In this document: piece after piece, positions 16,169-57,826 of the stretch | How positions within the stretch are numbered: the first letter of the stretch is position 1 | How the letters are laid out: each line of letters opens with the position of its first letter | IMG/VR virus record: IMGVR_UViG_3300049215_000771 | Span: 434,001-498,000 of that record | DNA length: 64,000 bases | Strand: one strand, 5' to 3' | Position numbers and translations under genes: made by a program | Notes under the pieces: model-generated | Told to the model about the DNA's origin: nothing | The model's input: the letters and a program-made list of their open reading frames with translations, nothing else | Database searches by the model: none

Positions 16169-17644
16169 TCACGGTAGGCCCAATTCCTTGCGGGCAACTT
16201 TGTCAATCGGCAAAGGAGCGCCCATCACAGCCGTTCGTCCGCTCGTCGTCGTGGGGAAGGCGATAACTTCCTTCATCGAGTCCTCCTTGCACGCCAACAT
16301 CACCAGTCGGTCAATACCGAGAGCAATCCCTGCGTGTGGTGGAGTGCCGTAGTCGAAGGCTTCCAGCATATGCCCCACGCTGCGTTCGATCTCCGGTTGA
16401 GAATATCCCATTACCTTGTACGTTGCTTCCAGCATCGCCCTGGTATGTGCCCGAACGCTACCTGACCCGATCTCCATGCCGTTGCACACCAGGTCGTACT
16501 GATGAGCAACGATGTCACCCACGTTCTGACCCTGGAGTAGCCAATCACTGTGTTCTTCCAGCGGGGCCGAAAACGGGTTGTGCATGAAGGTCCACGAGGA
16601 CTTGCTGTCCAGCTTATCAACATCTTCCTTCGCCGGCTTGAACATTGGGAAGCGGACGATCCAGCAAAACATCAATGCGCCGGCGTCCTTCTGTGCCTGC
16701 GTCCTGATGTCGGGCTTGTCCGTGCCCCACCGATTCATCGCTTCTTCGTAGGTGAAGATCGGGAAGCTGTTGCCGATGCCGCCGAGATAGGGATAGCGTT
16801 TTAACTGCCCGCCTTCATAGGTCCACGGCTCGTAGAGTTCTTTTTCTTTCTCGTAGTCCCAAATCTTCAGCTTGTAGAAAATAGAACGAACAACTTCCGT
16901 AGCTGTGTGCAACACGCTACTTTCGGTGCCGAAAGCCATTTCCAGGTCAACCTGGGTAAACTCGAAGCCCCGGTCGGAACGAGGAGTCTCGTCCCTGAAG
17001 CACCGAGCAATCTGGTAGTAGGCCGGCACGCCACCCGTCATCAACAATTGCTTGTACTGCTGCGGGCTTTGTGGCAGGGCATAGAACTCGTTGTGGTAGA
17101 GCCGAGAAGGAACAACGAAGTCCCGTGCCCCTTCCTTTGTGGGAGCCGCCAAGATTGGCGTCTCGATCTCCAGAAAACCTCGCCCGTCCAGACACTCACG
17201 GATCGCCTGAAGGGTCTTGGCACGAACCCGAAGGTTGCGTGCCATACGCTTGCGGCGAAGGTCGATGTATCTGTAGCGAAGGCGCTTGTCGATGTCGGTT
17301 TCGTATCCGTCCGACTGAACTGTGATCGGCAGCGGCTTCGTGGCGTTGAGAACTTCGACGTTCCCGACCACGAACTCCACCTTGCCCGTGTACATATCGG
17401 GATTTTCCATGTGTTCAGGGCGGGCTTTCACCTGGCCATGAAACCTCACAACATCTTCGAGATTCAACCCGGCAAGGGTTTTGTTGCGACCGACACACTG
17501 CACGATGTAACCTTCACCATCCCGAAGGTCAATGAAGGTCATTTTGCCGTGGTCACGCTTGGCGTCCACCCACCCCTGGATGGAAAAAAGAGTCGAAGAC
17601 CCCGCCAAACGGACTGTGGACTCAATGCTTGTGTGTTGAGACAT
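16169..17644 (-). CDS. aspS: Aspartyl-tRNA synthetase, compact (GAD domain absent), non-discriminating signature
   Basis: OB fold GWV..KRDHG..FIDLRD; motif 2 QIARCFRDE; GTDKPDIR joined directly to FCWIVRFPMF; motif 3 GIDRL. Start MSQH at 17644. Confidence 0.93.
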   Translation of the reverse strand: MSQHTSIESTVRLAGSSTLFSIQGWVDAKRDHGKMTFIDLRDGEGYIVQCVGRNKTLAGLNLEDVVRFHGQVKARPEHMENPDMYTGKVEFVVGNVEVLNATKPLPITVQSDGYETDIDKRLRYRYIDLRRKRMARNLRVRAKTLQAIRECLDGRGFLEIETPILAAPTKEGARDFVVPSRLYHNEFYALPQSPQQYKQLLMTGGVPAYYQIARCFRDETPRSDRGFEFTQVDLEMAFGTESSVLHTATEVVRSIFYKLKIWDYEKEKELYEPWTYEGGQLKRYPYLGGIGNSFPIFTYEEAMNRWGTDKPDIRTQAQKDAGALMFCWIVRFPMFKPAKEDVDKLDSKSSWTFMHNPFSAPLEEHSDWLLQGQNVGDIVAHQYDLVCNGMEIGSGSVRAHTRAMLEATYKVMGYSQPEIERSVGHMLEAFDYGTPPHAGIALGIDRLVMLACKEDSMKEVIAFPTTTSGRTAVMGAPLPIDKVARKELGLP

Positions 17645-17897
17645 CGTATTCCTCGGTTTCCAAAGGTTCTGTATGTGTTGCCAAAGGCGGCGCAGGGTAG
17701 TGTTCGCACGGAGAAGGCCACCACACAAGTAGCGGCCCCATGACGTTGACTTCCCACCTTCCCCATCGCCCGCCCAAGGCTCGTCTGTAACCACGATACT
17801 CCCAAAAACGACTAGGTTCGCTCGCCTTGCCACGGAGTTTCTTCCAAAGCAAGATCAGGGACCACATGATTGTACTCCGTTTGTTTGAGGTTGTAAA

Positions 17898-19343
17898 TCA
17901 AAAATCAATACCATCTTTGATGATAACCTCGTGACCCTGCTCCTGCAAGATGCGAATTCGTTTCTTGGAGTGATCCAGCAGGTAATCGTTGATGTCGAAC
18001 ACGAAATCGTAGTAATTCAAGCCAGCCTTATCTTCCGCCTTGCGTAGACCTCGGCCCATGCGCTGAACGATTAGGTGATCTGCTTGCCCGCCAGCGGCGT
18101 TGATGAGATTGTGAATGAAAACATTGATGCCTGTGTTGAAGATTTGCTGCGTTGCAATTGCAACAACATCCTGGCTCGATTTCTGAAGCTGCTTGATGAC
18201 ACTTTTCCTGGTTGTCGCATTGTCCTTGCCCTGAACCCACAAGCTGCCAGGAATCAAGCTGTGCAAGGCATCTCCGTGAGCGATGCGATCCACTAAAATC
18301 AACGTCCGGCCTGTTTGTTGGGTCGCCAATCGCTTCACGATGTCGTGGAAGTAGTAGCTTTCAGCAATGCCACGGGTCACGGCATCCATGTAGATGTCAT
18401 GAGGAATTTTTGGTTCGTCGATTGGGTAGAAGATACATTTCGAGGCCGACAAGATGCCACGATTCTGCAATTCCTGTGTTGTCAGGATTCCAGTCGTCGT
18501 AGATTTCTTCAGCTTCAGAACCGGCCCGAAGAAACCTTTGACGTAGAACTTCTGTACTGTGTCCGTCTCGCCAAACTTGAATGGCGTGGCGGACATGGCG
18601 ATCCGTACCGACGCCAACTTCATACGCCTGTACACAGCTTTGGGCATGGCCGACATCATGTCGTGAATTTCGTCAACAATCAAAGCCTTGAACTTTGGCA
18701 GGAGGCGTTCGATTTTCTGTGCCGACTGGACTGTGGCGACTGTGATAAGATTGGGTTTGAACGTACCACCCCAAACCGCCCCGACACCAGGAAACCCCCA
18801 CTGGCAGATTTCATCGTAGTTTTGCTGCGCCAGACCCGCTCGGTTTTGAAGGATCAAAGTAGGAGTGCCTGGAGGCAAAGCCTTCAAAATACCAACCATG
18901 ATGTTGGTTTTACCAGCCGAAGTAGGGGCAAAAACCACGCCTCGGTGGTGTTTGTTGACTAAGTTGATGAATTCAACCTGGTAATCATGGAGGGTGATCG
19001 GGTCTTTGCCTTTCTGGAGCCAGCGGTTGAGAAACTGGTCATCTACCGACTCGATTCCTGTGTTGATACGCTGGCGCTCGTCGATGACCTGGTATTTGAC
19101 TCCCAGCTTATCATCAAGAATAAACTGAACTTCAGGCAGAAGCCCCGTCAGAAACTTTCCTGTCTCGATTTTGAAGAATTCGGTGTAGCCATCCCATAGT
19201 CGTTGTTTGTAACGTCGATTGTGGAAGTAATTCCTTTCACGAAATCGTAGCTTGTCCCACAAGACATGCTTGATACCCATATCATCGGAGATGAAATACG
19301 AGTAGTCATTGCTGATCTTGAGGAGGTTGTTGCTGTTGCTCAT
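17898..19343 (-). CDS. Superfamily II helicase, UvsW-like
   Basis: APTSAGKT, VDEIH, SAT, NTGIN and QRMGRGLR motifs; N-terminal UvsW-like domain. Confidence 0.88.
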   Translation of the reverse strand: MSNSNNLLKISNDYSYFISDDMGIKHVLWDKLRFRERNYFHNRRYKQRLWDGYTEFFKIETGKFLTGLLPEVQFILDDKLGVKYQVIDERQRINTGIESVDDQFLNRWLQKGKDPITLHDYQVEFINLVNKHHRGVVFAPTSAGKTNIMVGILKALPPGTPTLILQNRAGLAQQNYDEICQWGFPGVGAVWGGTFKPNLITVATVQSAQKIERLLPKFKALIVDEIHDMMSAMPKAVYRRMKLASVRIAMSATPFKFGETDTVQKFYVKGFFGPVLKLKKSTTTGILTTQELQNRGILSASKCIFYPIDEPKIPHDIYMDAVTRGIAESYYFHDIVKRLATQQTGRTLILVDRIAHGDALHSLIPGSLWVQGKDNATTRKSVIKQLQKSSQDVVAIATQQIFNTGINVFIHNLINAAGGQADHLIVQRMGRGLRKAEDKAGLNYYDFVFDINDYLLDHSKKRIRILQEQGHEVIIKDGIDF

Positions 19344-19497
19344 TAGTACCTTTGCTCAGTGATGCCAACTGGTTGCGTATCGGGTTGGCGAGGGATATTT
19401 TACCCGATTTGTGCCCCCGGCGTCGAGTCTTCTTCTTGGGTTTTCTTCCACAACACATATTGCCTCCAGGGTATATATGGTCGGGTATAATTACTTC

Positions 19498-19812
19498 ATG
19501 ATCCAGCCGATTCTCGAACTTGATCCTTTGGTGGTGTGCAACCAGAACCGGAAGTTGAAAGCTGTCTGGTCGATGGAAGCACAGCAAGATGTTCGTGCCA
19601 TGCACAACATCCCGGCAGCCAGTGCGCTCGCTGCGCAGATAGCGGCAGAAATCAACGCCGAGATCGACCAGGAAATACTCAACGACTTGAGGAATGCTAT
19701 AAATCCATTCCCACAGTACATCCCACCACCCGCCCCGAAACCTGAAGTGTGGGGCGTCAAGAAGAAAGCCCGCAAGCAGTACCGTTCGATTGATGATCCG
19801 TGGGAGAAGTGA
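19498..19812 (+). CDS. Small protein containing an internal segment of a T4 gp23-like major capsid protein
   Basis: RKLKAVWSMEAQQDVRAMHNI...AEINAEIDQEILNDL matches the recalled gp23 segment R.LKA.(Y/W)S.E.AQDLRA.HG......EI..EI.REI; ends with the RSIDD motif. Confidence 0.65.
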   Translation: MIQPILELDPLVVCNQNRKLKAVWSMEAQQDVRAMHNIPAASALAAQIAAEINAEIDQEILNDLRNAINPFPQYIPPPAPKPEVWGVKKKARKQYRSIDDPWEK

Positions 19813-38851: not shown

Positions 38852-38877
38852 AAAAAACCCGCACGATGGCGGGTTTT
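38852..38877 (-). terminator. Intrinsic terminator at the end of the tRNA-Ser pair
   Basis: AAAACCCGC-CATCGT-GCGGGTTTTTT on the minus strand. Confidence 0.85.
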
Positions 38878-39406: not shown

Positions 39407-40051
39407 TCACTGCGTCCCGCTTTCCACACTCGGCTCGGCAGCATGGACCCCAGCGATCCCTGCGAAGTTGATGGGAACCTCGCTGTCCACGACCAGCGTG
39501 CCCACGGCGTCGTGCAGCACGATATTGCGAGCGCCCAGGGCGGCGATGGCGTCCTGAACGGCCTGCGGGTTGGCGTCATCGGTGAGGGTCACGATATACT
39601 GGTACTGACCAACTTCCTTCACTTCCTGGCTGTTCTCAACGCCACTGATGGCGGCGAAGTTGAGGGGAACCTCGCTGTCAACGGTCATGAGGCCCATGCC
39701 GTGAATCTCGATGTTGCGAGCGCCCTGCGCCGCCACAGCTTGTTTCACGGCCTCCAGGGTAGCCGTCGAGTCGAGGGCTTCCGCCGTCAGGGTCAGGACG
39801 TACTTCTTCATCTTCGTCTTGCCTTTCTTCTTGCGTGCTTCGTACTCGGCGATTTTGTTCGACATGAGGACCATGTGGGTCAAACCGCCAACAAACCCCA
39901 GCACTACGGATATGATCGTGATCCAGGGCATAGTTCCTAGACGGGAATCTAGGAATATGCCCAGGATCATCGGGGCGACCATTTCCATGCCGCACTGAGC
40001 AAGGGCCATATACATGCCCATTTCTTTGCGATCACCGTCGTTCGGGATCAT
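39407..40051 (-). CDS. AtpI/AtpZ-like membrane domain fused in frame to a duplicated small alpha/beta domain
   Basis: ALAQCGMEMVAPMILGIFLDSRLGTMPW...GFVGG, then two ~60-aa repeats (Y.(L/V)TLT...GARNI...VDSEVP.NFA.I.GV). Confidence 0.6.
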   Translation of the reverse strand: MIPNDGDRKEMGMYMALAQCGMEMVAPMILGIFLDSRLGTMPWITIISVVLGFVGGLTHMVLMSNKIAEYEARKKKGKTKMKKYVLTLTAEALDSTATLEAVKQAVAAQGARNIEIHGMGLMTVDSEVPLNFAAISGVENSQEVKEVGQYQYIVTLTDDANPQAVQDAIAALGARNIVLHDAVGTLVVDSEVPINFAGIAGVHAAEPSVESGTQ

Positions 40052-40431
40052 TGCTTGCCCGCCGCCACCCGTTGTGCAGACATCAGGATATTGTAGTTGC
40101 TCATGCGCTGCTGCGCTTCAGCATTCGCTGCCGCTCGATTCTGTGCCCGCTGGATATTGATGGCCTTGTGCGCCGCCCAGGTCTGCTGTTGAAGCATGAG
40201 TCGCTGATTGTAGTAATCGAGCGGCGTCATCAACGTCTTGGTCGGCAACGGAGTCGTGAGTGTCGAAGGCAGCGTCGGCAATGCCTTCATCAGATCGGCA
40301 CGGGTCGGCGCACATTGCGCCGTACATTTTCCGTTCTTGCAGGAGAAGGTCGGTGGTCCGCCGATCACCGGCGCTTGCCCGAAGGCAGTTGCGGAAAATA
40401 CCAACACGGCGAGCAAAGACAGAATTCTCAT
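40048..40431 (-). CDS. Secreted hypothetical protein
   Basis: Signal peptide MRILSLLAVLVFSATAFGQ. Confidence 0.6.
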   Translation of the reverse strand: MRILSLLAVLVFSATAFGQAPVIGGPPTFSCKNGKCTAQCAPTRADLMKALPTLPSTLTTPLPTKTLMTPLDYYNQRLMLQQQTWAAHKAINIQRAQNRAAANAEAQQRMSNYNILMSAQRVAAGKQ

Positions 40432-40964: not shown

Positions 40965-41459
40965 TTACCCTGAAAAATCCTGGTTGTAAAGTCCCTTGCG
41001 AAGATACCACCGATTTGCTTCAAGGTACTGGAGGGTTCCGTTAAACTCCTCCTGCGGCACCCGGCTGAAATACTGGTTGATCCAGTTTTGCGCCTCGACG
41101 TTACTGGCCGGCATTGTCGGCACGGGAATGAAGTACAAGGTGATTGTGGTCGGGTTGCATAGCTCGAACAGTTCGCCTTCGGGAATCTCCTCGAACTGGT
41201 CGAGCAGCATCATGAAAGCACAACAAACTCGATGCTCCTCGTCGATGCCGATGAGAAACATCCCTTCCGGCCACTTATTGGGAGGAAGATACATCTGATG
41301 CGTTCGCATGTAGCGAACGCAATTCGCCATCCGACTCAGGGTCGGATCATCCTCGAAGAAACCTTCGTCACGTTTGAGTGGGTTGTCGGGATCGACGAGT
41401 TTGTGAATAGGAACAAGAATCGGCTTCAACGCTCCAAGTTCCCAATCAGGACTGTCCAT
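40965..41459 (-). CDS. Hypothetical protein
   Basis: Start trimmed to MDSPDW, immediately after the upstream stop codon. Confidence 0.5.
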   Translation of the reverse strand: MDSPDWELGALKPILVPIHKLVDPDNPLKRDEGFFEDDPTLSRMANCVRYMRTHQMYLPPNKWPEGMFLIGIDEEHRVCCAFMMLLDQFEEIPEGELFELCNPTTITLYFIPVPTMPASNVEAQNWINQYFSRVPQEEFNGTLQYLEANRWYLRKGLYNQDFSG

Positions 41460-41460
41460 G

Positions 41461-41757
41461 TTACCATCCAGCTTGATAGAAGTAGTGACATCCAGGACAC
41501 TGCATCCGTACAGGGTCGCCGGCCTCAACGAAATACGGTTCTTTCTTCTCAAGAACCGTGCCGCATCTCGGACAAAACGTACTTCTGGCAACTGGAAGGT
41601 CTTTGGTGCATTGCTCATTCATAAGCCGCTGACTTTCCAGCAAGACCGCCGTGGTTTGTCGGGACCACTTATCGGAGATGCCTTTCAGCAAGCCATGCTT
41701 ATTCCACCGTGCCTCCAGTTGTTTTGCTTCTTCGAGGAAACGATGATTCGGGTTCAT
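41461..41757 (-). CDS. Small protein: gp23-like capsid N-terminal segment fused to a zinc ribbon
   Basis: EARWNKHGLLKGISDKWSRQTTAVLLESQ resembles the T4-like MCP N-terminus (EKW..L....I....R..TA.LLENQ); then CPRC...CPGC. Confidence 0.6.
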   Translation of the reverse strand: MNPNHRFLEEAKQLEARWNKHGLLKGISDKWSRQTTAVLLESQRLMNEQCTKDLPVARSTFCPRCGTVLEKKEPYFVEAGDPVRMQCPGCHYFYQAGW

Positions 41758-42257
41758 TTCACTATCACCTTATTCCCATCAACAACGATCAACTTCTCAC
41801 CTTCGACGATCTCGATGGGTTTTTCTTTTTTCTTTTTTTCTGGTGGCGGGTCATCGGGGAACATCTTCTTGTAGACTTTGATGTACACAATGTACAAAGT
41901 CAACGAAATGATGAGGAAGTCCAAGAATGCTTTTATCAGGTGGCCTATCTCAACATTCATGCCGGCGACCGGATGGATCACCATATCCCGCCAGTTCCCA
42001 GCAGAAGCCCCTCCGTTGACAAAATAATTGACGACTGGCATCAGGGCGTAGTCGCAAATTGCAGTCACGACCTTGTTGAAAGCAGCCGCCATAATAAGAC
42101 CCACAGCGACTTGCATCATATCTTTGTTGAAAGCGAACTTCTTGTATTCCTCCAACTCCTTGCTTGGGTCAATGACTATCGGGCCGAGCATTTTCTGTGT
42201 TGCATTGCCCGGCTCAGGTGGTGTAGGTTGTGGAGGAAGCGGCGTCACGTTGTTCAT
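41754..42257 (-). CDS. mscL: Large-conductance mechanosensitive channel
   Basis: EYKKFAF...MQVAVGLIMAAAFNKVV...MP, G.LIKAFLDFLII; ATG lies just after the tRNA-Leu 3' end. Confidence 0.85.
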   Translation of the reverse strand: MNNVTPLPPQPTPPEPGNATQKMLGPIVIDPSKELEEYKKFAFNKDMMQVAVGLIMAAAFNKVVTAICDYALMPVVNYFVNGGASAGNWRDMVIHPVAGMNVEIGHLIKAFLDFLIISLTLYIVYIKVYKKMFPDDPPPEKKKKEKPIEIVEGEKLIVVDGNKVIVK

Positions 42258-42259
42258 AG

Positions 42260-42342
42260 TGGCCTGGGTGGGAGTCGAACCCACATGGTCTTGCGACCGG
42301 CAGATTTTGAGTCTGCTGCGTATACCGTTTCGCCACCAGGCC
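42260..42342 (-). tRNA. tRNA-Leu(CAA), long V arm
   Basis: GGCCTGG/CCAGGCC, A73, GCAGA-CTCAAAA-TCTGC. Confidence 0.93.
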
Positions 42343-43630
42343 AACCATCATGTGGTATTGTAGAATGACGACATGATGAGTCCAATCTGGATTGGTTTTG
42401 CGCCACCAGCCTTGGTAACTTCCAACCACGCCCGCTCGCACGCTGCGACTTCCACGGCATTGTCGGTCCAAGGTTCAAGCGGAACTTCCACTGTCATCTT
42501 CGTCCAGGTTCCGTCTTTCCACAGTAGGTACACTTCCACCTTCTTCATTTTTCTTCCTCAGTGTGACCTTCACCCCGCCGTAACTTAACGACATCTCGGA
42601 GATGAAGGGGAAGTCCGCCAAAATTCCCGACGCCTGTTTCATCACTTGCCTGACGATTTGCAGGTCGTCGGCTGGGTTCTCGCTCCCTTTCATGCAATTC
42701 TCCATCCAAATACGCCTTGAGGATCACCAGCACGTCAGCTTGTTTCATCCCCATTTCTTTGGCGACTTCTGCCAGAGCTACTTCGTGATCCCTCGGATAG
42801 AGCCTGGTTTTCAAGTAGATCAGAAACAACACTTGCCAGGGACGTTTTTCTTTACTGTACTCCCTTTTGAGAAAGAAATCCGTGCCCTGCTTGCCAGTAA
42901 TCTCCGGGAACCTGAAAACGAGCGGTTTTGGTTTTTCCTTCACCGGCTTTGCCTTCGGCATCCCTTTCTTGTAGTTTCTGATGTTCCTGTAAACTTCAGG
43001 CACAGGAACTTTCGCCATCTCAGCAACTTGTTCCGGCTTGTAGCCCAGGCGAAGATACAACAAACATTCGAGGAACTTGTTGCCTGGCTTTGCTTCGAGC
43101 AGCGTCCGAATCTCGGCAGCTTCGTGTTGCCATTCAACCTTGGGGGCGAGTTTTTTCTTTCTCCATCGCCAGCGCCATGTCATCGTGTAGTCCACCAGCG
43201 TTTGAGTCGTTGCCACCAGGTATGGTAAATGCGTTGATGATGCTGATGTTCCTTCATCCTTTCGAGGGCCAAAGTCTTGAACCCACAATCGACACACTGG
43301 TACTCAATGTCAAGTTCACTACCATCCAGAACTTGACCATCCTTCAGGCCAATGGTCGGGATCAGGATATTTGCCGCAGTCCTGGGCGGTATCTCGCCCA
43401 GGTTGTCGATATGAACGCTCATGTTCATGGTGGTTGATCCGGGTATACCCGGTCCAGTTCGTGTTCTTCTTCAATCAGCTTGTTCAACTTTCGGAAGTAG
43501 GCGATGGCGTCCTCAACATTGCCGGTCGTGGGGACTTTGAGCGCCACCCTGCGGTCGGCAAGGTCTTGCAATCGCCTCATCTTCTCGGCCTCGGTGATCT
43601 GGTTGGGCGGCGTGCCCAGCAGGATATTTC

Positions 43631-44236
43631 TCACTTCGGGGCCACCTTCCTGAACTCGGTAGCCAACTCATTGTAGATGGGTTGGTACTTGGTTTTGAAG
43701 TAAGCCCAATCATAATGCGGGTCGTTCAGGATGTCAAACCAGAATTGGTTCGCCGCCCCGAAATCCAAAATCTGCCCATGATCGGCGATTTGCTTGCCGA
43801 AGTTGAGTATTCTCAACGAGTGGAATAGGCTTTTCCAACCGATGTAGAAGTCTTTCTCAACCTCGATCTTCTTCTTCGCCTTCACGAAACTGTGAGACGC
43901 CTTCGCCGACAACTCGTTGCGAAGGCTGCCCAGGTTCAGCTTGAACTTGAATCGCTTCTTCACCTGACCGTCAGGATGGAAATATCCCTCCAGGGTGTGA
44001 ATCTTGTGCAGGTCCAGTTGTTGCTGCCAGTCCCGCTTGTTGTAAATGTGAATGTTCACATTGTCGTGGCGGAACTCAGTCCCGGTATCGGCACGACGAT
44101 TCTCAGGCACGATAGCCATGTAGTCGTAGTCCGACTTGTCGCTATGCGTACCATAAACCCGGCTGCCGTAGGGGACAAGAACCACATCCCTGTCCGACAG
44201 CCCGTAGGTCGCCTTGAAATAGTCAATGCCGTTCAT
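43631..44236 (-). CDS. Pol-beta-superfamily nucleotidyltransferase
   Basis: YGSRVYG...SDYDY (GS...DxD); start MNGID. Confidence 0.75.
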   Translation of the reverse strand: MNGIDYFKATYGLSDRDVVLVPYGSRVYGTHSDKSDYDYMAIVPENRRADTGTEFRHDNVNIHIYNKRDWQQQLDLHKIHTLEGYFHPDGQVKKRFKFKLNLGSLRNELSAKASHSFVKAKKKIEVEKDFYIGWKSLFHSLRILNFGKQIADHGQILDFGAANQFWFDILNDPHYDWAYFKTKYQPIYNELATEFRKVAPK

Positions 44237-57735: not shown

Positions 57736-57826
57736 TTGGCAAGGTGGGATTCGATACCCACACGGTAGATTCGTCAACCTACCAACCCCCTCTAGCGGGG
57801 GCTGCGTCTTCTTCCGCCACTTGCCA
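57736..57826 (-). tRNA. tRNA-like RNA with an aberrant anticodon loop (GCTAGA) and 8-nt T loop
   Basis: TGGCAAG/CTTGCCA, A73; CCCCC-GCTAGA-GGGGG; 8-bp V arm; GTGGG-TATCGAAT-CCCAC. Confidence 0.6.

What the first reader, a model, noticed from the sequence alone, without database searches (positions are those of the whole stretch)
41461..41757. Second capsid-derived mini-protein: gp23 N-terminus plus zinc ribbon
The first ~50 aa resemble the T4-like MCP N-terminal (prohead scaffold-interacting) region, fused to CPRC...CPGC. With the 19498 ORF, two different capsid segments are redeployed as separate small genes 22 kb apart, which is less like simple decay of one duplicate.
Basis: partly seen in the sequence, partly recalled or inferred. 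Interest (0 to 1): 0.65.

Follow-up and report, generated by a model that had tools for sequence, protein, structure and literature searches.

The report
Capsid-propeptide copy fused to zinc ribbon
A 533-kb phage carries a small, conserved gene whose first half copies the start of its own major capsid protein and whose second half is a zinc ribbon. It belongs to a large, undescribed family of mini-proteins assembled from pieces of head-building proteins.

Summary
Window 41461-41757 (minus strand) encodes a 98-aa protein, P0001. Residues 1-48 are 65% identical to residues 1-48 of the phage's own 478-aa major capsid protein (MCP; E 1e-16). That MCP lies 136 kb away in a T4-like protease-scaffold-MCP cluster. 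Residues 49-98 hold CPRC...CPGC and fold as a zinc ribbon.

It is not a decaying remnant. Orthologues at 86, 71 and 53% identity keep both halves. dN/dS is about 0.2, synteny is kept, and synonymous sites against the MCP are saturated.

Homology stops at an invariant ...L-x-N-E48 in every copy. A profile of the module finds 288 protein clusters. Most are under 140 aa with varied tails: zinc ribbons, a dCMP deaminase, other MCP pieces and short Trp-containing tags. The same profile also hits the N-terminal extensions of diverse Gp23-family MCPs.

The genome holds at least seven MCP pieces, plus portal and protease pieces. Many carry a C-terminal KKKKYRSIDDPWE tag.

My best mechanism, inferred at about 0.4, is that the module is a portable prohead address, like a long capsid-targeting propeptide. 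It would load the zinc ribbon into proheads and be cut off after E48. Binding, packaging and cleavage are untested.

The parts
41461..41757 (-). Gene of the 98-aa mini-protein P0001 (stop codon 41461-41463)
   Evidence: ORF. Orthologues P0002-P0004 at 86/71/53% identity. dN/dS 0.20 against the L006 orthologue.
41614..41757 (-). N-module, residues 1-48: a diverged copy of the MCP N-terminal module, predicted as two helices (3-19, 30-47) and ending in the conserved L45-x-N47-E48
   Evidence: 64.6% identity to own MCP 1-48, E 1e-16; tblastn E 8.6e-14. Invariant columns in A1/A2. AF2 helices. N at P2 in 103/126 and E at P1 in 107/126 family members.
41464..41613 (-). C-terminal half, residues 49-98: zinc ribbon with CPRC (nt 41563-41574) and CPGC (nt 41488-41499) and a conserved aromatic ...YQAGW end
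   Evidence: Sub-threshold Pfam zinc-ribbon hits (DZR E 3.3e-4; Zn_Ribbon_TF E 9e-5 for P0003). AF2 strands at 56-96, pLDDT 85. Foldseek finds only generic RPB9/TFIIS/Rpp21-type ribbons. No paralogue in the genome and no homologue outside the orthologues.
40965..41459 (-). Downstream 164-aa gene, start 1 nt after the P0001 stop; a conserved neighbour of unknown function
   Evidence: The same pair is found in L006 (97 aa + 164 aa) and beside the distant P0091 (111 aa + overlapping 161 aa). Its only homologue is 93% identical. No Pfam or PHROG hit. Identical contigs in RNA libraries cover 41123-41423.
41754..42257 (-). Upstream MscL-like gene whose stop overlaps the P0001 start (ATGA)
   Evidence: PF01741 E 5.4e-19. 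The same neighbour is seen in L006. The start is set at ATG 42257 because tRNA-Leu occupies 42259-42342.
42259..42342 (-). tRNA-Leu(CAA), directly upstream on the same strand
   Evidence: ARAGORN.
43709..43737 (-). Sigma-70-like promoter candidate for the co-directional block (tentative)
   Evidence: TTGACA-17-TATGAT, 11 of 12 matches. This is a consensus match only.
38854..38877 (-). Intrinsic-terminator-like hairpin closing the co-directional block (tentative)
   Evidence: 9-bp stem followed by a T-run. This is a consensus match only.
19498..19812 (+). Sister mini-gene in the window: MCP piece (about residues 257-310) ending in ...KQYRSIDDPWEK
   Evidence: PF07068 positions 146-196, E 1.9e-12. 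59% identity to own MCP. Tag found.

Best explanation
P0001 is a real chimeric gene under purifying selection. Its first 48 residues are an old, diverged copy of the helical module that precedes the Gp23 domain in the phage's own major capsid protein. The remaining 50 residues are a four-cysteine zinc ribbon.

I think the N-module most likely does in the mini-protein what it does in the MCP: it contacts the interior of the assembling prohead. The partner could be the scaffold core, the prohead protease or neighbouring MCP N-modules. The mini-protein would then be co-assembled into proheads, like a long version of the T4 capsid-targeting sequence or the giant-phage propeptides. The invariant ...L-x-N-E48 boundary is the likely prohead-protease site. 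Cleavage there would free a ~50-aa zinc-ribbon peptide inside the head.

Shown: the homology, its sharp boundary, purifying selection on both halves, conserved synteny, and portability of the module (it is fused to many different tails, including an enzyme).

Inferred: binding to head components, packaging, cleavage after E48, and any role of the zinc ribbon after release.
For: 1. Homology to the phage's own MCP residues 1-48, E 1e-16 / 8.6e-14.
2. The module is the segment just before the PF07068 domain in diverse Gp23-family MCPs. In T4 the N-terminal part of gp23 is a propeptide removed by the prohead protease, and N-terminal propeptides target proteins into proheads (PMC5694885, PMC9958956).
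3. In all 16 aligned copies homology stops at an invariant Glu. N-E ends the module in about 85% of 126 family members. T4-type prohead proteases cut after Glu (PMC5694885). A true T4-type protease-scaffold-MCP cluster exists in this genome.
4. Both halves are under purifying selection: omega 0.13 for the N-part and 0.27 for the zinc-ribbon part, with dS about 1. Synonymous sites against the MCP are saturated.
5. The module is portable. Of 288 clusters, most are under 140 aa, and the module sits in front of zinc ribbons (P0020, P0091), a dCMP deaminase (P0038, PF00383 E 7.7e-20) and other domains.
6. Another head-assembly motif is reused in the same genome. The scaffold's C-terminal DLL[VI]LSGVK recurs at the end of a Cys/His-rich 191-aa ORF.
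Against: 1. No proteomic or binding data exist, and the single complex prediction (P0001 with the scaffold) gave no answer.
2. The gene lies 136 kb from the head module, in a tRNA/aminoacyl-tRNA-synthetase-rich block behind a sigma-70-like promoter. That looks more like an early or accessory region than a late one.
3. Many family members are the N-module alone with a short tail (P0005-P0007 and others), so they carry no obvious cargo.
4. The other MCP pieces (N-arm, the piece over MCP 257-310, C-terminus) are not explained by propeptide targeting.
5. Cleavage of this MCP's N-module is extrapolated from T4. The T4 site falls in a segment of about 35 residues that this MCP lacks.
Confidence: 0.4

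Rival explanations
1. Assembly modulator or weapon. The free N-module competes with MCP N-termini for scaffold, protease or neighbouring subunits. It would either tune the phage's own head assembly or poison the assembly of closely related co-infecting phages. The zinc ribbon would only stabilise or dimerise it.
For: Many family members are the N-module alone, without cargo. The other mini-genes copy different MCP regions. MCPs of this clade are 83-96% identical across more than 350 contigs, so relatives share the target. All minis differ from all MCPs at two fixed positions: S/G42 against N42, and T/S35 against A/C35.
Against: The pieces resemble the phage's own MCP as closely as any other, so self-poisoning would need to be avoided somehow. 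Fusion to an enzyme (P0038) fits an address label better than an inhibitor. No test was run.
Confidence: 0.2
2. Anti-defence decoy. Pieces of MCP, portal and protease are made as separate small proteins to occupy or mislead host immune sensors that recognise conserved head proteins.
For: Fragment-type paralogues in this genome come mostly from head proteins: six MCP pieces, one portal piece and one protease piece. Only two other genes (at 422 kb and 399 kb, functions not examined) also have short partial paralogues. Bacterial sensors for MCP, portal and other core phage proteins are described (10.64898/2026.01.04.697583). The possible early-type promoter would suit a counter-defence gene.
Against: Isolated helices or arms are unlikely to reproduce the folded surfaces that such sensors bind. 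A piece that mimics the trigger could just as well set off the defence. No defence gene or known anti-defence domain is linked to the locus.
Confidence: 0.15
3. Assembly-coupled regulator. The zinc ribbon binds nucleic acid or RNA polymerase, and the N-module lets free scaffold or proheads sequester it. Gene expression would then follow the state of head assembly, in the manner of an export or assembly checkpoint.
For: The ribbon's nearest structural look-alikes are TFIIB/RPB9/TFIIS/Rpp21-type ribbons. A weak sigma-70 region 3/4-like ORF lies upstream in the same block.
Against: All of these matches are generic and below threshold. No DNA- or RNA-binding evidence exists. The sigma-like hits have E of about 0.03.
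Confidence: 0.1
4. Non-functional relic: a leftover 5' end of a duplicated MCP gene that happens to remain open.
For: Large phage genomes accumulate partial duplications. The function is unknown.
Against: The architecture is kept at 86, 71 and 53% identity, with omega about 0.2 in both halves and dS about 1. Synteny is conserved in three lineages. The four cysteines are kept. The gene is translationally coupled on both sides.
Confidence: 0.03

Closest known systems
T4 capsid-targeting sequences (IPI-III, Alt) and the long N-terminal propeptides of giant-phage head proteins (SPN3US, phiKZ group)
   Same: An N-terminal peptide that is not part of the mature protein, directs it into the prohead core, and is removed by a prohead protease cutting after Glu. 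It is portable to foreign cargo (PMC5694885, PMC9958956).
   Different: Here the candidate address is a 48-residue copy of the MCP's own N-terminal module, not an unrelated 10-20-residue peptide. Targeting and cleavage are not shown. Many family members carry no cargo. The gene lies far from the head module.
N-terminal propeptide of T4 gp23 (delta piece) and the HK97 delta domain
   Same: It has the same position in the MCP, directly before the Gp23/HK97-fold body. It is helical, and it ends at a Glu.
   Different: It occurs as a free-standing gene fused to a zinc ribbon. phmmer does not align it to T4 gp23 residues 1-65. This MCP lacks the ~35-residue segment that holds the T4 cleavage site.
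Capsid-protein paralogues such as the T4 vertex protein gp24
   Same: They derive from duplication of the MCP gene and are kept as separate genes.
   Different: gp24 keeps the whole fold. P0001 keeps only the 48-residue extension and has no PF07068 domain.
Scaffold mimicry by phage satellites (SaPI1 CpmB sharing the helper scaffold's C-terminal capsid-binding motif; recalled from memory, not tested here)
   Same: A short assembly-interface segment of a head protein is copied onto another small protein so that it engages the capsid assembly line.
   Different: That case is a satellite acting on a helper phage and copies the scaffold. Here the phage copies its own MCP (and its own scaffold motif on another ORF).
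Small stand-alone zinc-ribbon proteins (TFIIB/RPB9/TFIIS type)
   Same: Two CxxC knuckles on beta-hairpins.
   Different: No family-level membership: all Pfam scores are below the gathering cut-offs, and there are no homologues outside the orthologues.

Membership tests
Pfam PF07068 Gp23 (T4-type major capsid protein) | A match to the Gp23 domain model (the HK97-fold body) | tested here: not met
   P0001 has no PF07068 hit. The six-frame search of the genome with PF07068 at E<=10 does not report this ORF. The model starts at about MCP residue 56, so the N-module lies outside it.
N-terminal module of Gp23-family MCPs (defined here by profile A2) | Significant sequence similarity to the segment preceding the Gp23 domain in bona fide MCPs | tested here: met
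   E 1e-16 to the phage's own MCP 1-48. Profile A2 hits MCPs such as P0125 (module 1-47, PF07068 from residue 66) and P0143 (module 16-54, PF07068 from residue 72).
N-terminal module of Gp23-family MCPs (defined here by profile A2) | A helical hairpin ending in the conserved L-x-N-E boundary | tested here: met
   AF2 helices at 3-19 and 30-47. E48, L45 and R44 are invariant in A1. N-E ends the module in about 85% of members.
Prohead-protease-processed propeptide / capsid-targeting sequence | Cleavage by the prohead protease and removal from the mature protein | not testable with these tools
   This needs mass spectrometry of proheads and virions. Only a candidate site after E48 and the presence of a T4-type protease (PF03420, E 4e-29) can be stated.
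Prohead-protease-processed propeptide / capsid-targeting sequence | The protein is found inside proheads or virions | not testable with these tools
   The phage is uncultured. The complex prediction with the scaffold gave no answer.
Prohead-protease-processed propeptide / capsid-targeting sequence | Portability: the same peptide sits in front of unrelated cargo | tested here: met
   The module precedes zinc ribbons, a dCMP deaminase (P0038) and other domains.
Zinc ribbon | Two CxxC knuckles on beta-hairpins | tested here: met
   CPRC at 62-65 and CPGC at 87-90, conserved in P0002-P0004, P0020 and P0091. Strands at 56-96 in the AF2 model.
Zinc ribbon | A score above a curated family cut-off | tested here: not met
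   The best hit is DZR at 21.2 bits against a cut-off of 27.3. Zn_Ribbon_TF scores 22.4 against 29 for P0003.
Zinc ribbon | Zinc binding | not testable with these tools
   This needs metal analysis of purified protein.

The most novel reading that the evidence does not exclude
A clade of huge (0.5-0.6 Mb) environmental phages runs a combinatorial 'address-label' system. Short pieces of head-morphogenesis proteins (the MCP N-module, N-arm, a mid-MCP piece and C-terminus, the protease N-terminus, a portal piece) are shuffled with zinc knuckles, enzymes and short Trp-centred peptide motifs (K-rich + YRSIDDPWE, NYWLDKK, VNWLKEGF). The result is hundreds of mini-proteins that dock onto the assembling capsid by imitating native subunit contacts. 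P0001 would be the zinc-ribbon member of that system.
Probability: 0.3. Interest if true: 0.85.

Novelty: new variant of a known kind. Interest (0 to 1): 0.7.

Why it matters
How proteins are selected for packaging into large phage heads is still called 'mysterious' even for T4 (PMC9958956). If the MCP's own N-terminal module is the address, three things follow.

- It gives a sequence-readable rule for predicting head-internal or ejected proteins in uncultured huge phages.
- It gives a natural 48-residue tag for loading cargo into Gp23-type capsids.
- It is an example of new genes being made by cutting interface segments out of structural proteins.

If instead the pieces are decoys or inter-phage weapons, that would be a new class of phage counter-measure. 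In either case, several hundred 'hypothetical' small proteins in metagenomes gain a recognisable module.

Tried and rejected
- **Complex prediction, P0001 with the 299-aa scaffold:** no answer (score 0.00). This is not evidence either way.
- **Foldseek of the AF2 model against PDB and BFVD:** only generic zinc ribbons, best E 0.008. Nothing informative came back for the helical half.
- **Pfam and PHROGs on P0001:** only sub-threshold zinc-ribbon hits. A crAss001_48 hit at E 0.025 and HypA hits for P0003/P0004 were judged to be noise.
- **ESM Atlas look-alikes for P0001 and the 164-aa neighbour:** unnamed viral clusters. The GIY-YIG-like structural rows have TM below 0.5 on a low-confidence model.
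- **Maximum-likelihood tree of 17 N-modules:** unresolved with 48 columns. It cannot say whether the minis arose once or several times.
- **phmmer of the MCP against PDB:** aligns the body to T4 gp23 but not the N-module, so direct homology to the T4 delta piece is not demonstrated.
- **tblastn of P0001 against 50,697 phage records:** only the MCP N-terminus of LR756511.1. No cultured phage carries the mini-gene.
- **Zinc-ribbon half searched alone:** no paralogue and no homologue beyond the orthologues.
- **Five large related contigs (46-69% complete) and the 595-kb record LR756511.1:** no P0001 orthologue found. For the five fragments absence is uninformative. In LR756511.1 the tblastn search matched only the MCP N-terminus.
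- **Reads:** contigs from RNA libraries lie on neighbouring genes but not on P0001 itself. Contigs cannot show strand or expression level, so expression is not shown.
- **Literature:** no description of MCP-piece mini-genes or of the RSIDDPW motif was found.
- **Rejected idea, the shared tag as the read-through end of a mobile DNA or RNA element:** its codons differ synonymously, including Ser as AGC/AGT and as TCN. That points to selection on the peptide.

Full report
**What is there.** The window is G000:C1:434001-498000 of a 532,729-bp IMG/VR virus record. The ORF at 41461-41757 lies on the minus strand and encodes 98 aa, P0001. It is tightly packed between co-directional genes. Its ATG overlaps the stop of an MscL-like gene (PF01741, E 5.4e-19). 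Its TAA lies one base before the ATG of a 164-aa gene. A tRNA-Leu sits just upstream of the MscL-like gene, and the window holds 14 tRNA genes in all.

**The capsid connection is real.** The genome has a canonical T4-type head cluster:
- portal (PF07230, E 4e-75);
- a 687-aa frame;
- prohead protease (PF03420, E 4e-29);
- a 299-aa coiled-coil scaffold;
- a 478-aa MCP (PF07068, E 1e-86) at 338843-340279.

tblastn of that MCP against the whole genome finds P0001 with MCP residues 1-58, E 8.6e-14. Residues 1-48 are 64.6% identical, E 1e-16, while the next ORF scores E 0.3. The Pfam Gp23 model only starts near MCP residue 56. This is why neither Pfam nor the six-frame PF07068 search reports P0001. 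phmmer aligns the MCP body, but not this segment, to T4 gp23.

I therefore built a profile of the module (A2) and searched 1.84 billion representatives. It hits the N-terminal extensions of diverse PF07068 MCPs. Examples are P0125 (module 1-47, Pfam domain from residue 66) and P0143 (module 16-54, Pfam domain from residue 72).

**It is a selected gene, not debris.** The word search found three proteins with the same two-part architecture at 86, 71 and 53% identity (P0002-P0004), plus N-module-only minis.
- The 71% orthologue lies on a 90-kb contig with the same neighbours: MscL, the mini, a 164-aa gene, a 176-aa gene, then an ATPase_gene1 protein.
- A much more distant member, P0091, also ends in ...FQAGW. 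It again has an overlapping 161-aa gene downstream and the same wider neighbourhood.
- Nei-Gojobori dN/dS against the 71% orthologue is 0.20. The N-part gives 0.13 and the zinc-ribbon part 0.27, at dS of about 1.
- Against the phage's own MCP the module is only 62% identical in DNA, with synonymous sites saturated. The duplication is therefore old.
- The MCP's own module is even more constrained between relatives, with omega about 0.05.

**Anatomy.** AF2 with the 16-row alignment gives mean pLDDT 84.8. It shows helices at 3-19 and 30-47, then the short strands of a zinc ribbon around CPRC (62-65) and CPGC (87-90). Pfam zinc-ribbon hits are below threshold. Foldseek finds only generic RPB9/TFIIS/Rpp21-type ribbons. 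The ribbon has no paralogue in the genome and no homologue beyond the orthologues.

In the alignment of minis and MCPs, homology ends at exactly the same place in every copy: the invariant R44-L45-x-N47-E48. Across 126 family members, N at the second-last position and E at the last position of the module hold in about 85%. All minis carry S/G42 and T/S35, where all MCPs carry N42 and A/C35.

**The wider picture.** P0001 is one of at least seven MCP-derived pieces in this genome, and together they tile the MCP outside residues 103-250:

| MCP residues | Where |
|---|---|
| 1-48 | P0001 |
| 45-102 | 58 kb |
| ~257-310 | window 19.5 kb |
| 318-368 | 517.8 kb |
| 400-448 | 351.4 kb |
| 438-463 | 518.4 kb |
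| 307-478 | 524.3 kb (diverged copy) |

An all-against-all comparison shows that fragment-type paralogues come mostly from head genes: six MCP pieces, one portal piece and one protease piece. There is also a full scaffold paralogue. Two other genes, whose functions I did not examine, also have short partial paralogues, and the remaining hits are ordinary full-length pairs.

The pieces at 58, 351.4, 453.4 (window 19.5), 517.8 and 518.4 kb and the protease piece end in a Lys-rich run followed by YRSIDDPW. So do a gp32-like protein and several unknowns, giving 14 ORFs in all. The tag's codons differ synonymously, which indicates selection on the peptide. P0001 lacks this tag.

Relatives show the same habit.
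- Five large related contigs each carry several MCP pieces.
- The published 595-kb record LR756511.1 has an MCP 84% identical to this one. It carries five pieces, three of them joined to Cys-rich modules.
- It has neither a P0001 orthologue nor the RSIDDPW tag.

The profile search found 288 clusters at E <= 1e-3. Of the 153 sequences inspected (the 150 listed best hits plus P0001, P0002 and P0004), 112 are 140 aa or shorter. Some of these could be genes truncated at contig ends. The module sits in front of, behind or between:
- zinc ribbons (P0020, P0091);
- a WDCCDEC cluster;
- a dCMP deaminase (P0038, PF00383 E 7.7e-20, a complete ORF on a 7.9-kb contig);
- the MCP N-arm followed by an RS[IL]DDxW or a VNWLKEGF end;
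- a protease N-terminal piece;
- NYWLDKK leaders.

[quoted passage not shown] N-terminal propeptides act as capsid-targeting sequences that also carry foreign cargo into the head (PMC5694885, PMC9958956). The N-module has the right position, a sharp boundary ending in Glu, its own selection, and portability to unrelated tails.

I therefore favour, at about 0.4, that it is an address that brings the zinc ribbon into the prohead, where the protease releases it after E48. This is inference only. The points against it are listed under the best explanation.

The rivals are:
- a competitor or poison of assembly (0.2);
- a decoy for host sensors of head proteins (0.15);
- an assembly-coupled zinc-ribbon regulator (0.1);
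- a relic (0.03, contradicted by the selection data).

**Provenance and expression.** The same DNA is held by moss metagenomes. Contigs from metatranscriptome libraries match neighbouring genes at 100% identity (39992-40425, 41123-41423, 42222-42371) but not P0001 itself. Contigs cannot prove transcription.

**Novelty.** I found no description of MCP-piece mini-genes, of the N-module as a free-standing unit, or of the tags. If the module is a targeting propeptide, this is a new variant of a known kind. The family-wide mosaic of head-protein pieces could turn out to be something more unusual.

Noticed in passing
Genome-wide; in the window at 19363-19812 (+). Elsewhere at G000:C1 13720-14031, 18090-18464, 36306-36992, 58132-58437, 122231-122599, 158597-158890, 238157-238630(-), 246691-247134(-), 351043-351372, 351351-351617, 517793-518062, 518004-518273, 518192-518509: Fourteen ORFs carry a Lys/Arg run followed by [YWH]R[SN]ID[DE]PW, in all but one within 2-6 residues of the stop (in 18090-18464 the motif lies near the N-terminus). 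The codons vary synonymously, so selection acts on the peptide. The tag sits on MCP pieces, a protease-like piece, gp32-like proteins and unknowns. It occurs once each in relatives G001 and G003. It was not found in relatives G002 and G004 or in LR756511.1. Variants (RS[IL]DDxW[DE]) end other N-module minis in metagenomes. Its receptor is unknown.
   Followed up: partly
G000:C1 417457-417819(-), 238157-238630(-), 132721-133668(-), 524325-524810(+): There are partial or diverged paralogues of other head genes. These are a 120-aa ORF with a portal piece (portal residues 520-590), a 157-aa protease-like ORF (39% identity to protease residues 48-170) and a full scaffold paralogue (48%). A 161-aa ORF holds the diverged C-terminal third of the MCP behind an N-terminal KKRGKYRSIDDD. 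Fragment-type paralogues in this genome are mostly pieces of head genes; two other genes (422199-423641, 399428-400084) also have short partial paralogues.
   Followed up: partly
G000:C1 57538-58113(+) and 337906-338805(+): The scaffold's C-terminal motif DLL[VI]LSGVK recurs at the C-end of a 191-aa Cys/His-rich ORF. That ORF lies immediately upstream of the mini-gene carrying MCP residues 45-102. This may be a second kind of head-assembly mimic.
   Followed up: no
window 57736-57826 (-): ARAGORN calls a tRNA with anticodon CTA (labelled Pyl), which could be an amber suppressor. The stops of P0001 and of the tagged minis whose stop was read are TAA or TGA, so their ends do not depend on it. 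I did not examine whether TAG is recoded anywhere in the genome.
   Followed up: no
window 38882-63080 (-), 16169-17833 (-): Fourteen tRNA genes, all on the minus strand, are interspersed with small ORFs. The window also holds an aspartyl-tRNA-synthetase-like gene. Related contigs carry PheRS- and CysRS-like genes next to the P0001 block.
   Followed up: no
Proteins P0007, P0032, P0037, P0045, P0047, P0052, P0094; L094 1525-1734(-); G000:C1 286.3 and 287.0 kb: A recurrent MKN[YHF]WL..[KR]KK motif leads many N-module minis. It also appears as the tail of others (...GNYWLD...). Another recurrent extreme C-terminus is [KR][VI][ND]W[LI][KQ][ET]GF. P0001 itself ends in ...YQAGW. All three are Trp/Phe-centred short motifs of unknown role.
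   Followed up: partly
Protein P0038 (L114 1200-1928): The N-module is fused to a dCMP/cytidine deaminase domain (PF00383, E 7.7e-20) on a 7.9-kb metagenome contig. The contig also encodes an IF3-like protein and a TPP enzyme.
   Followed up: partly
Proteins P0041, P0064, P0089, P0099, P0103, P0105, P0109, P0113, P0121, P0140, P0142, P0144: These are compact Gp23-family proteins of 270-320 aa. They keep the N-module, N-arm, core and C-terminus but lack the large insertion of the 478-aa MCP. They may be MCPs of other phages or second capsid proteins.
   Followed up: no
window 41754-42257 (-) and 39407-40051 (-): The phage encodes an MscL-like channel and a protein with an ATPase_gene1-type membrane segment in the same block as P0001. 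Both neighbours are also present on the 90-kb related contig (L006).
   Followed up: no
LR756511.1 (loci L107-L113): The published 595-kb uncultured huge phage is a close relative (MCP 84% identical). It has its own set of five MCP pieces. One is a 100-aa ORF with a Cys-rich module in front of the MCP C-terminal piece. Two are insertion-domain pieces behind Cys-rich modules.
   Followed up: partly
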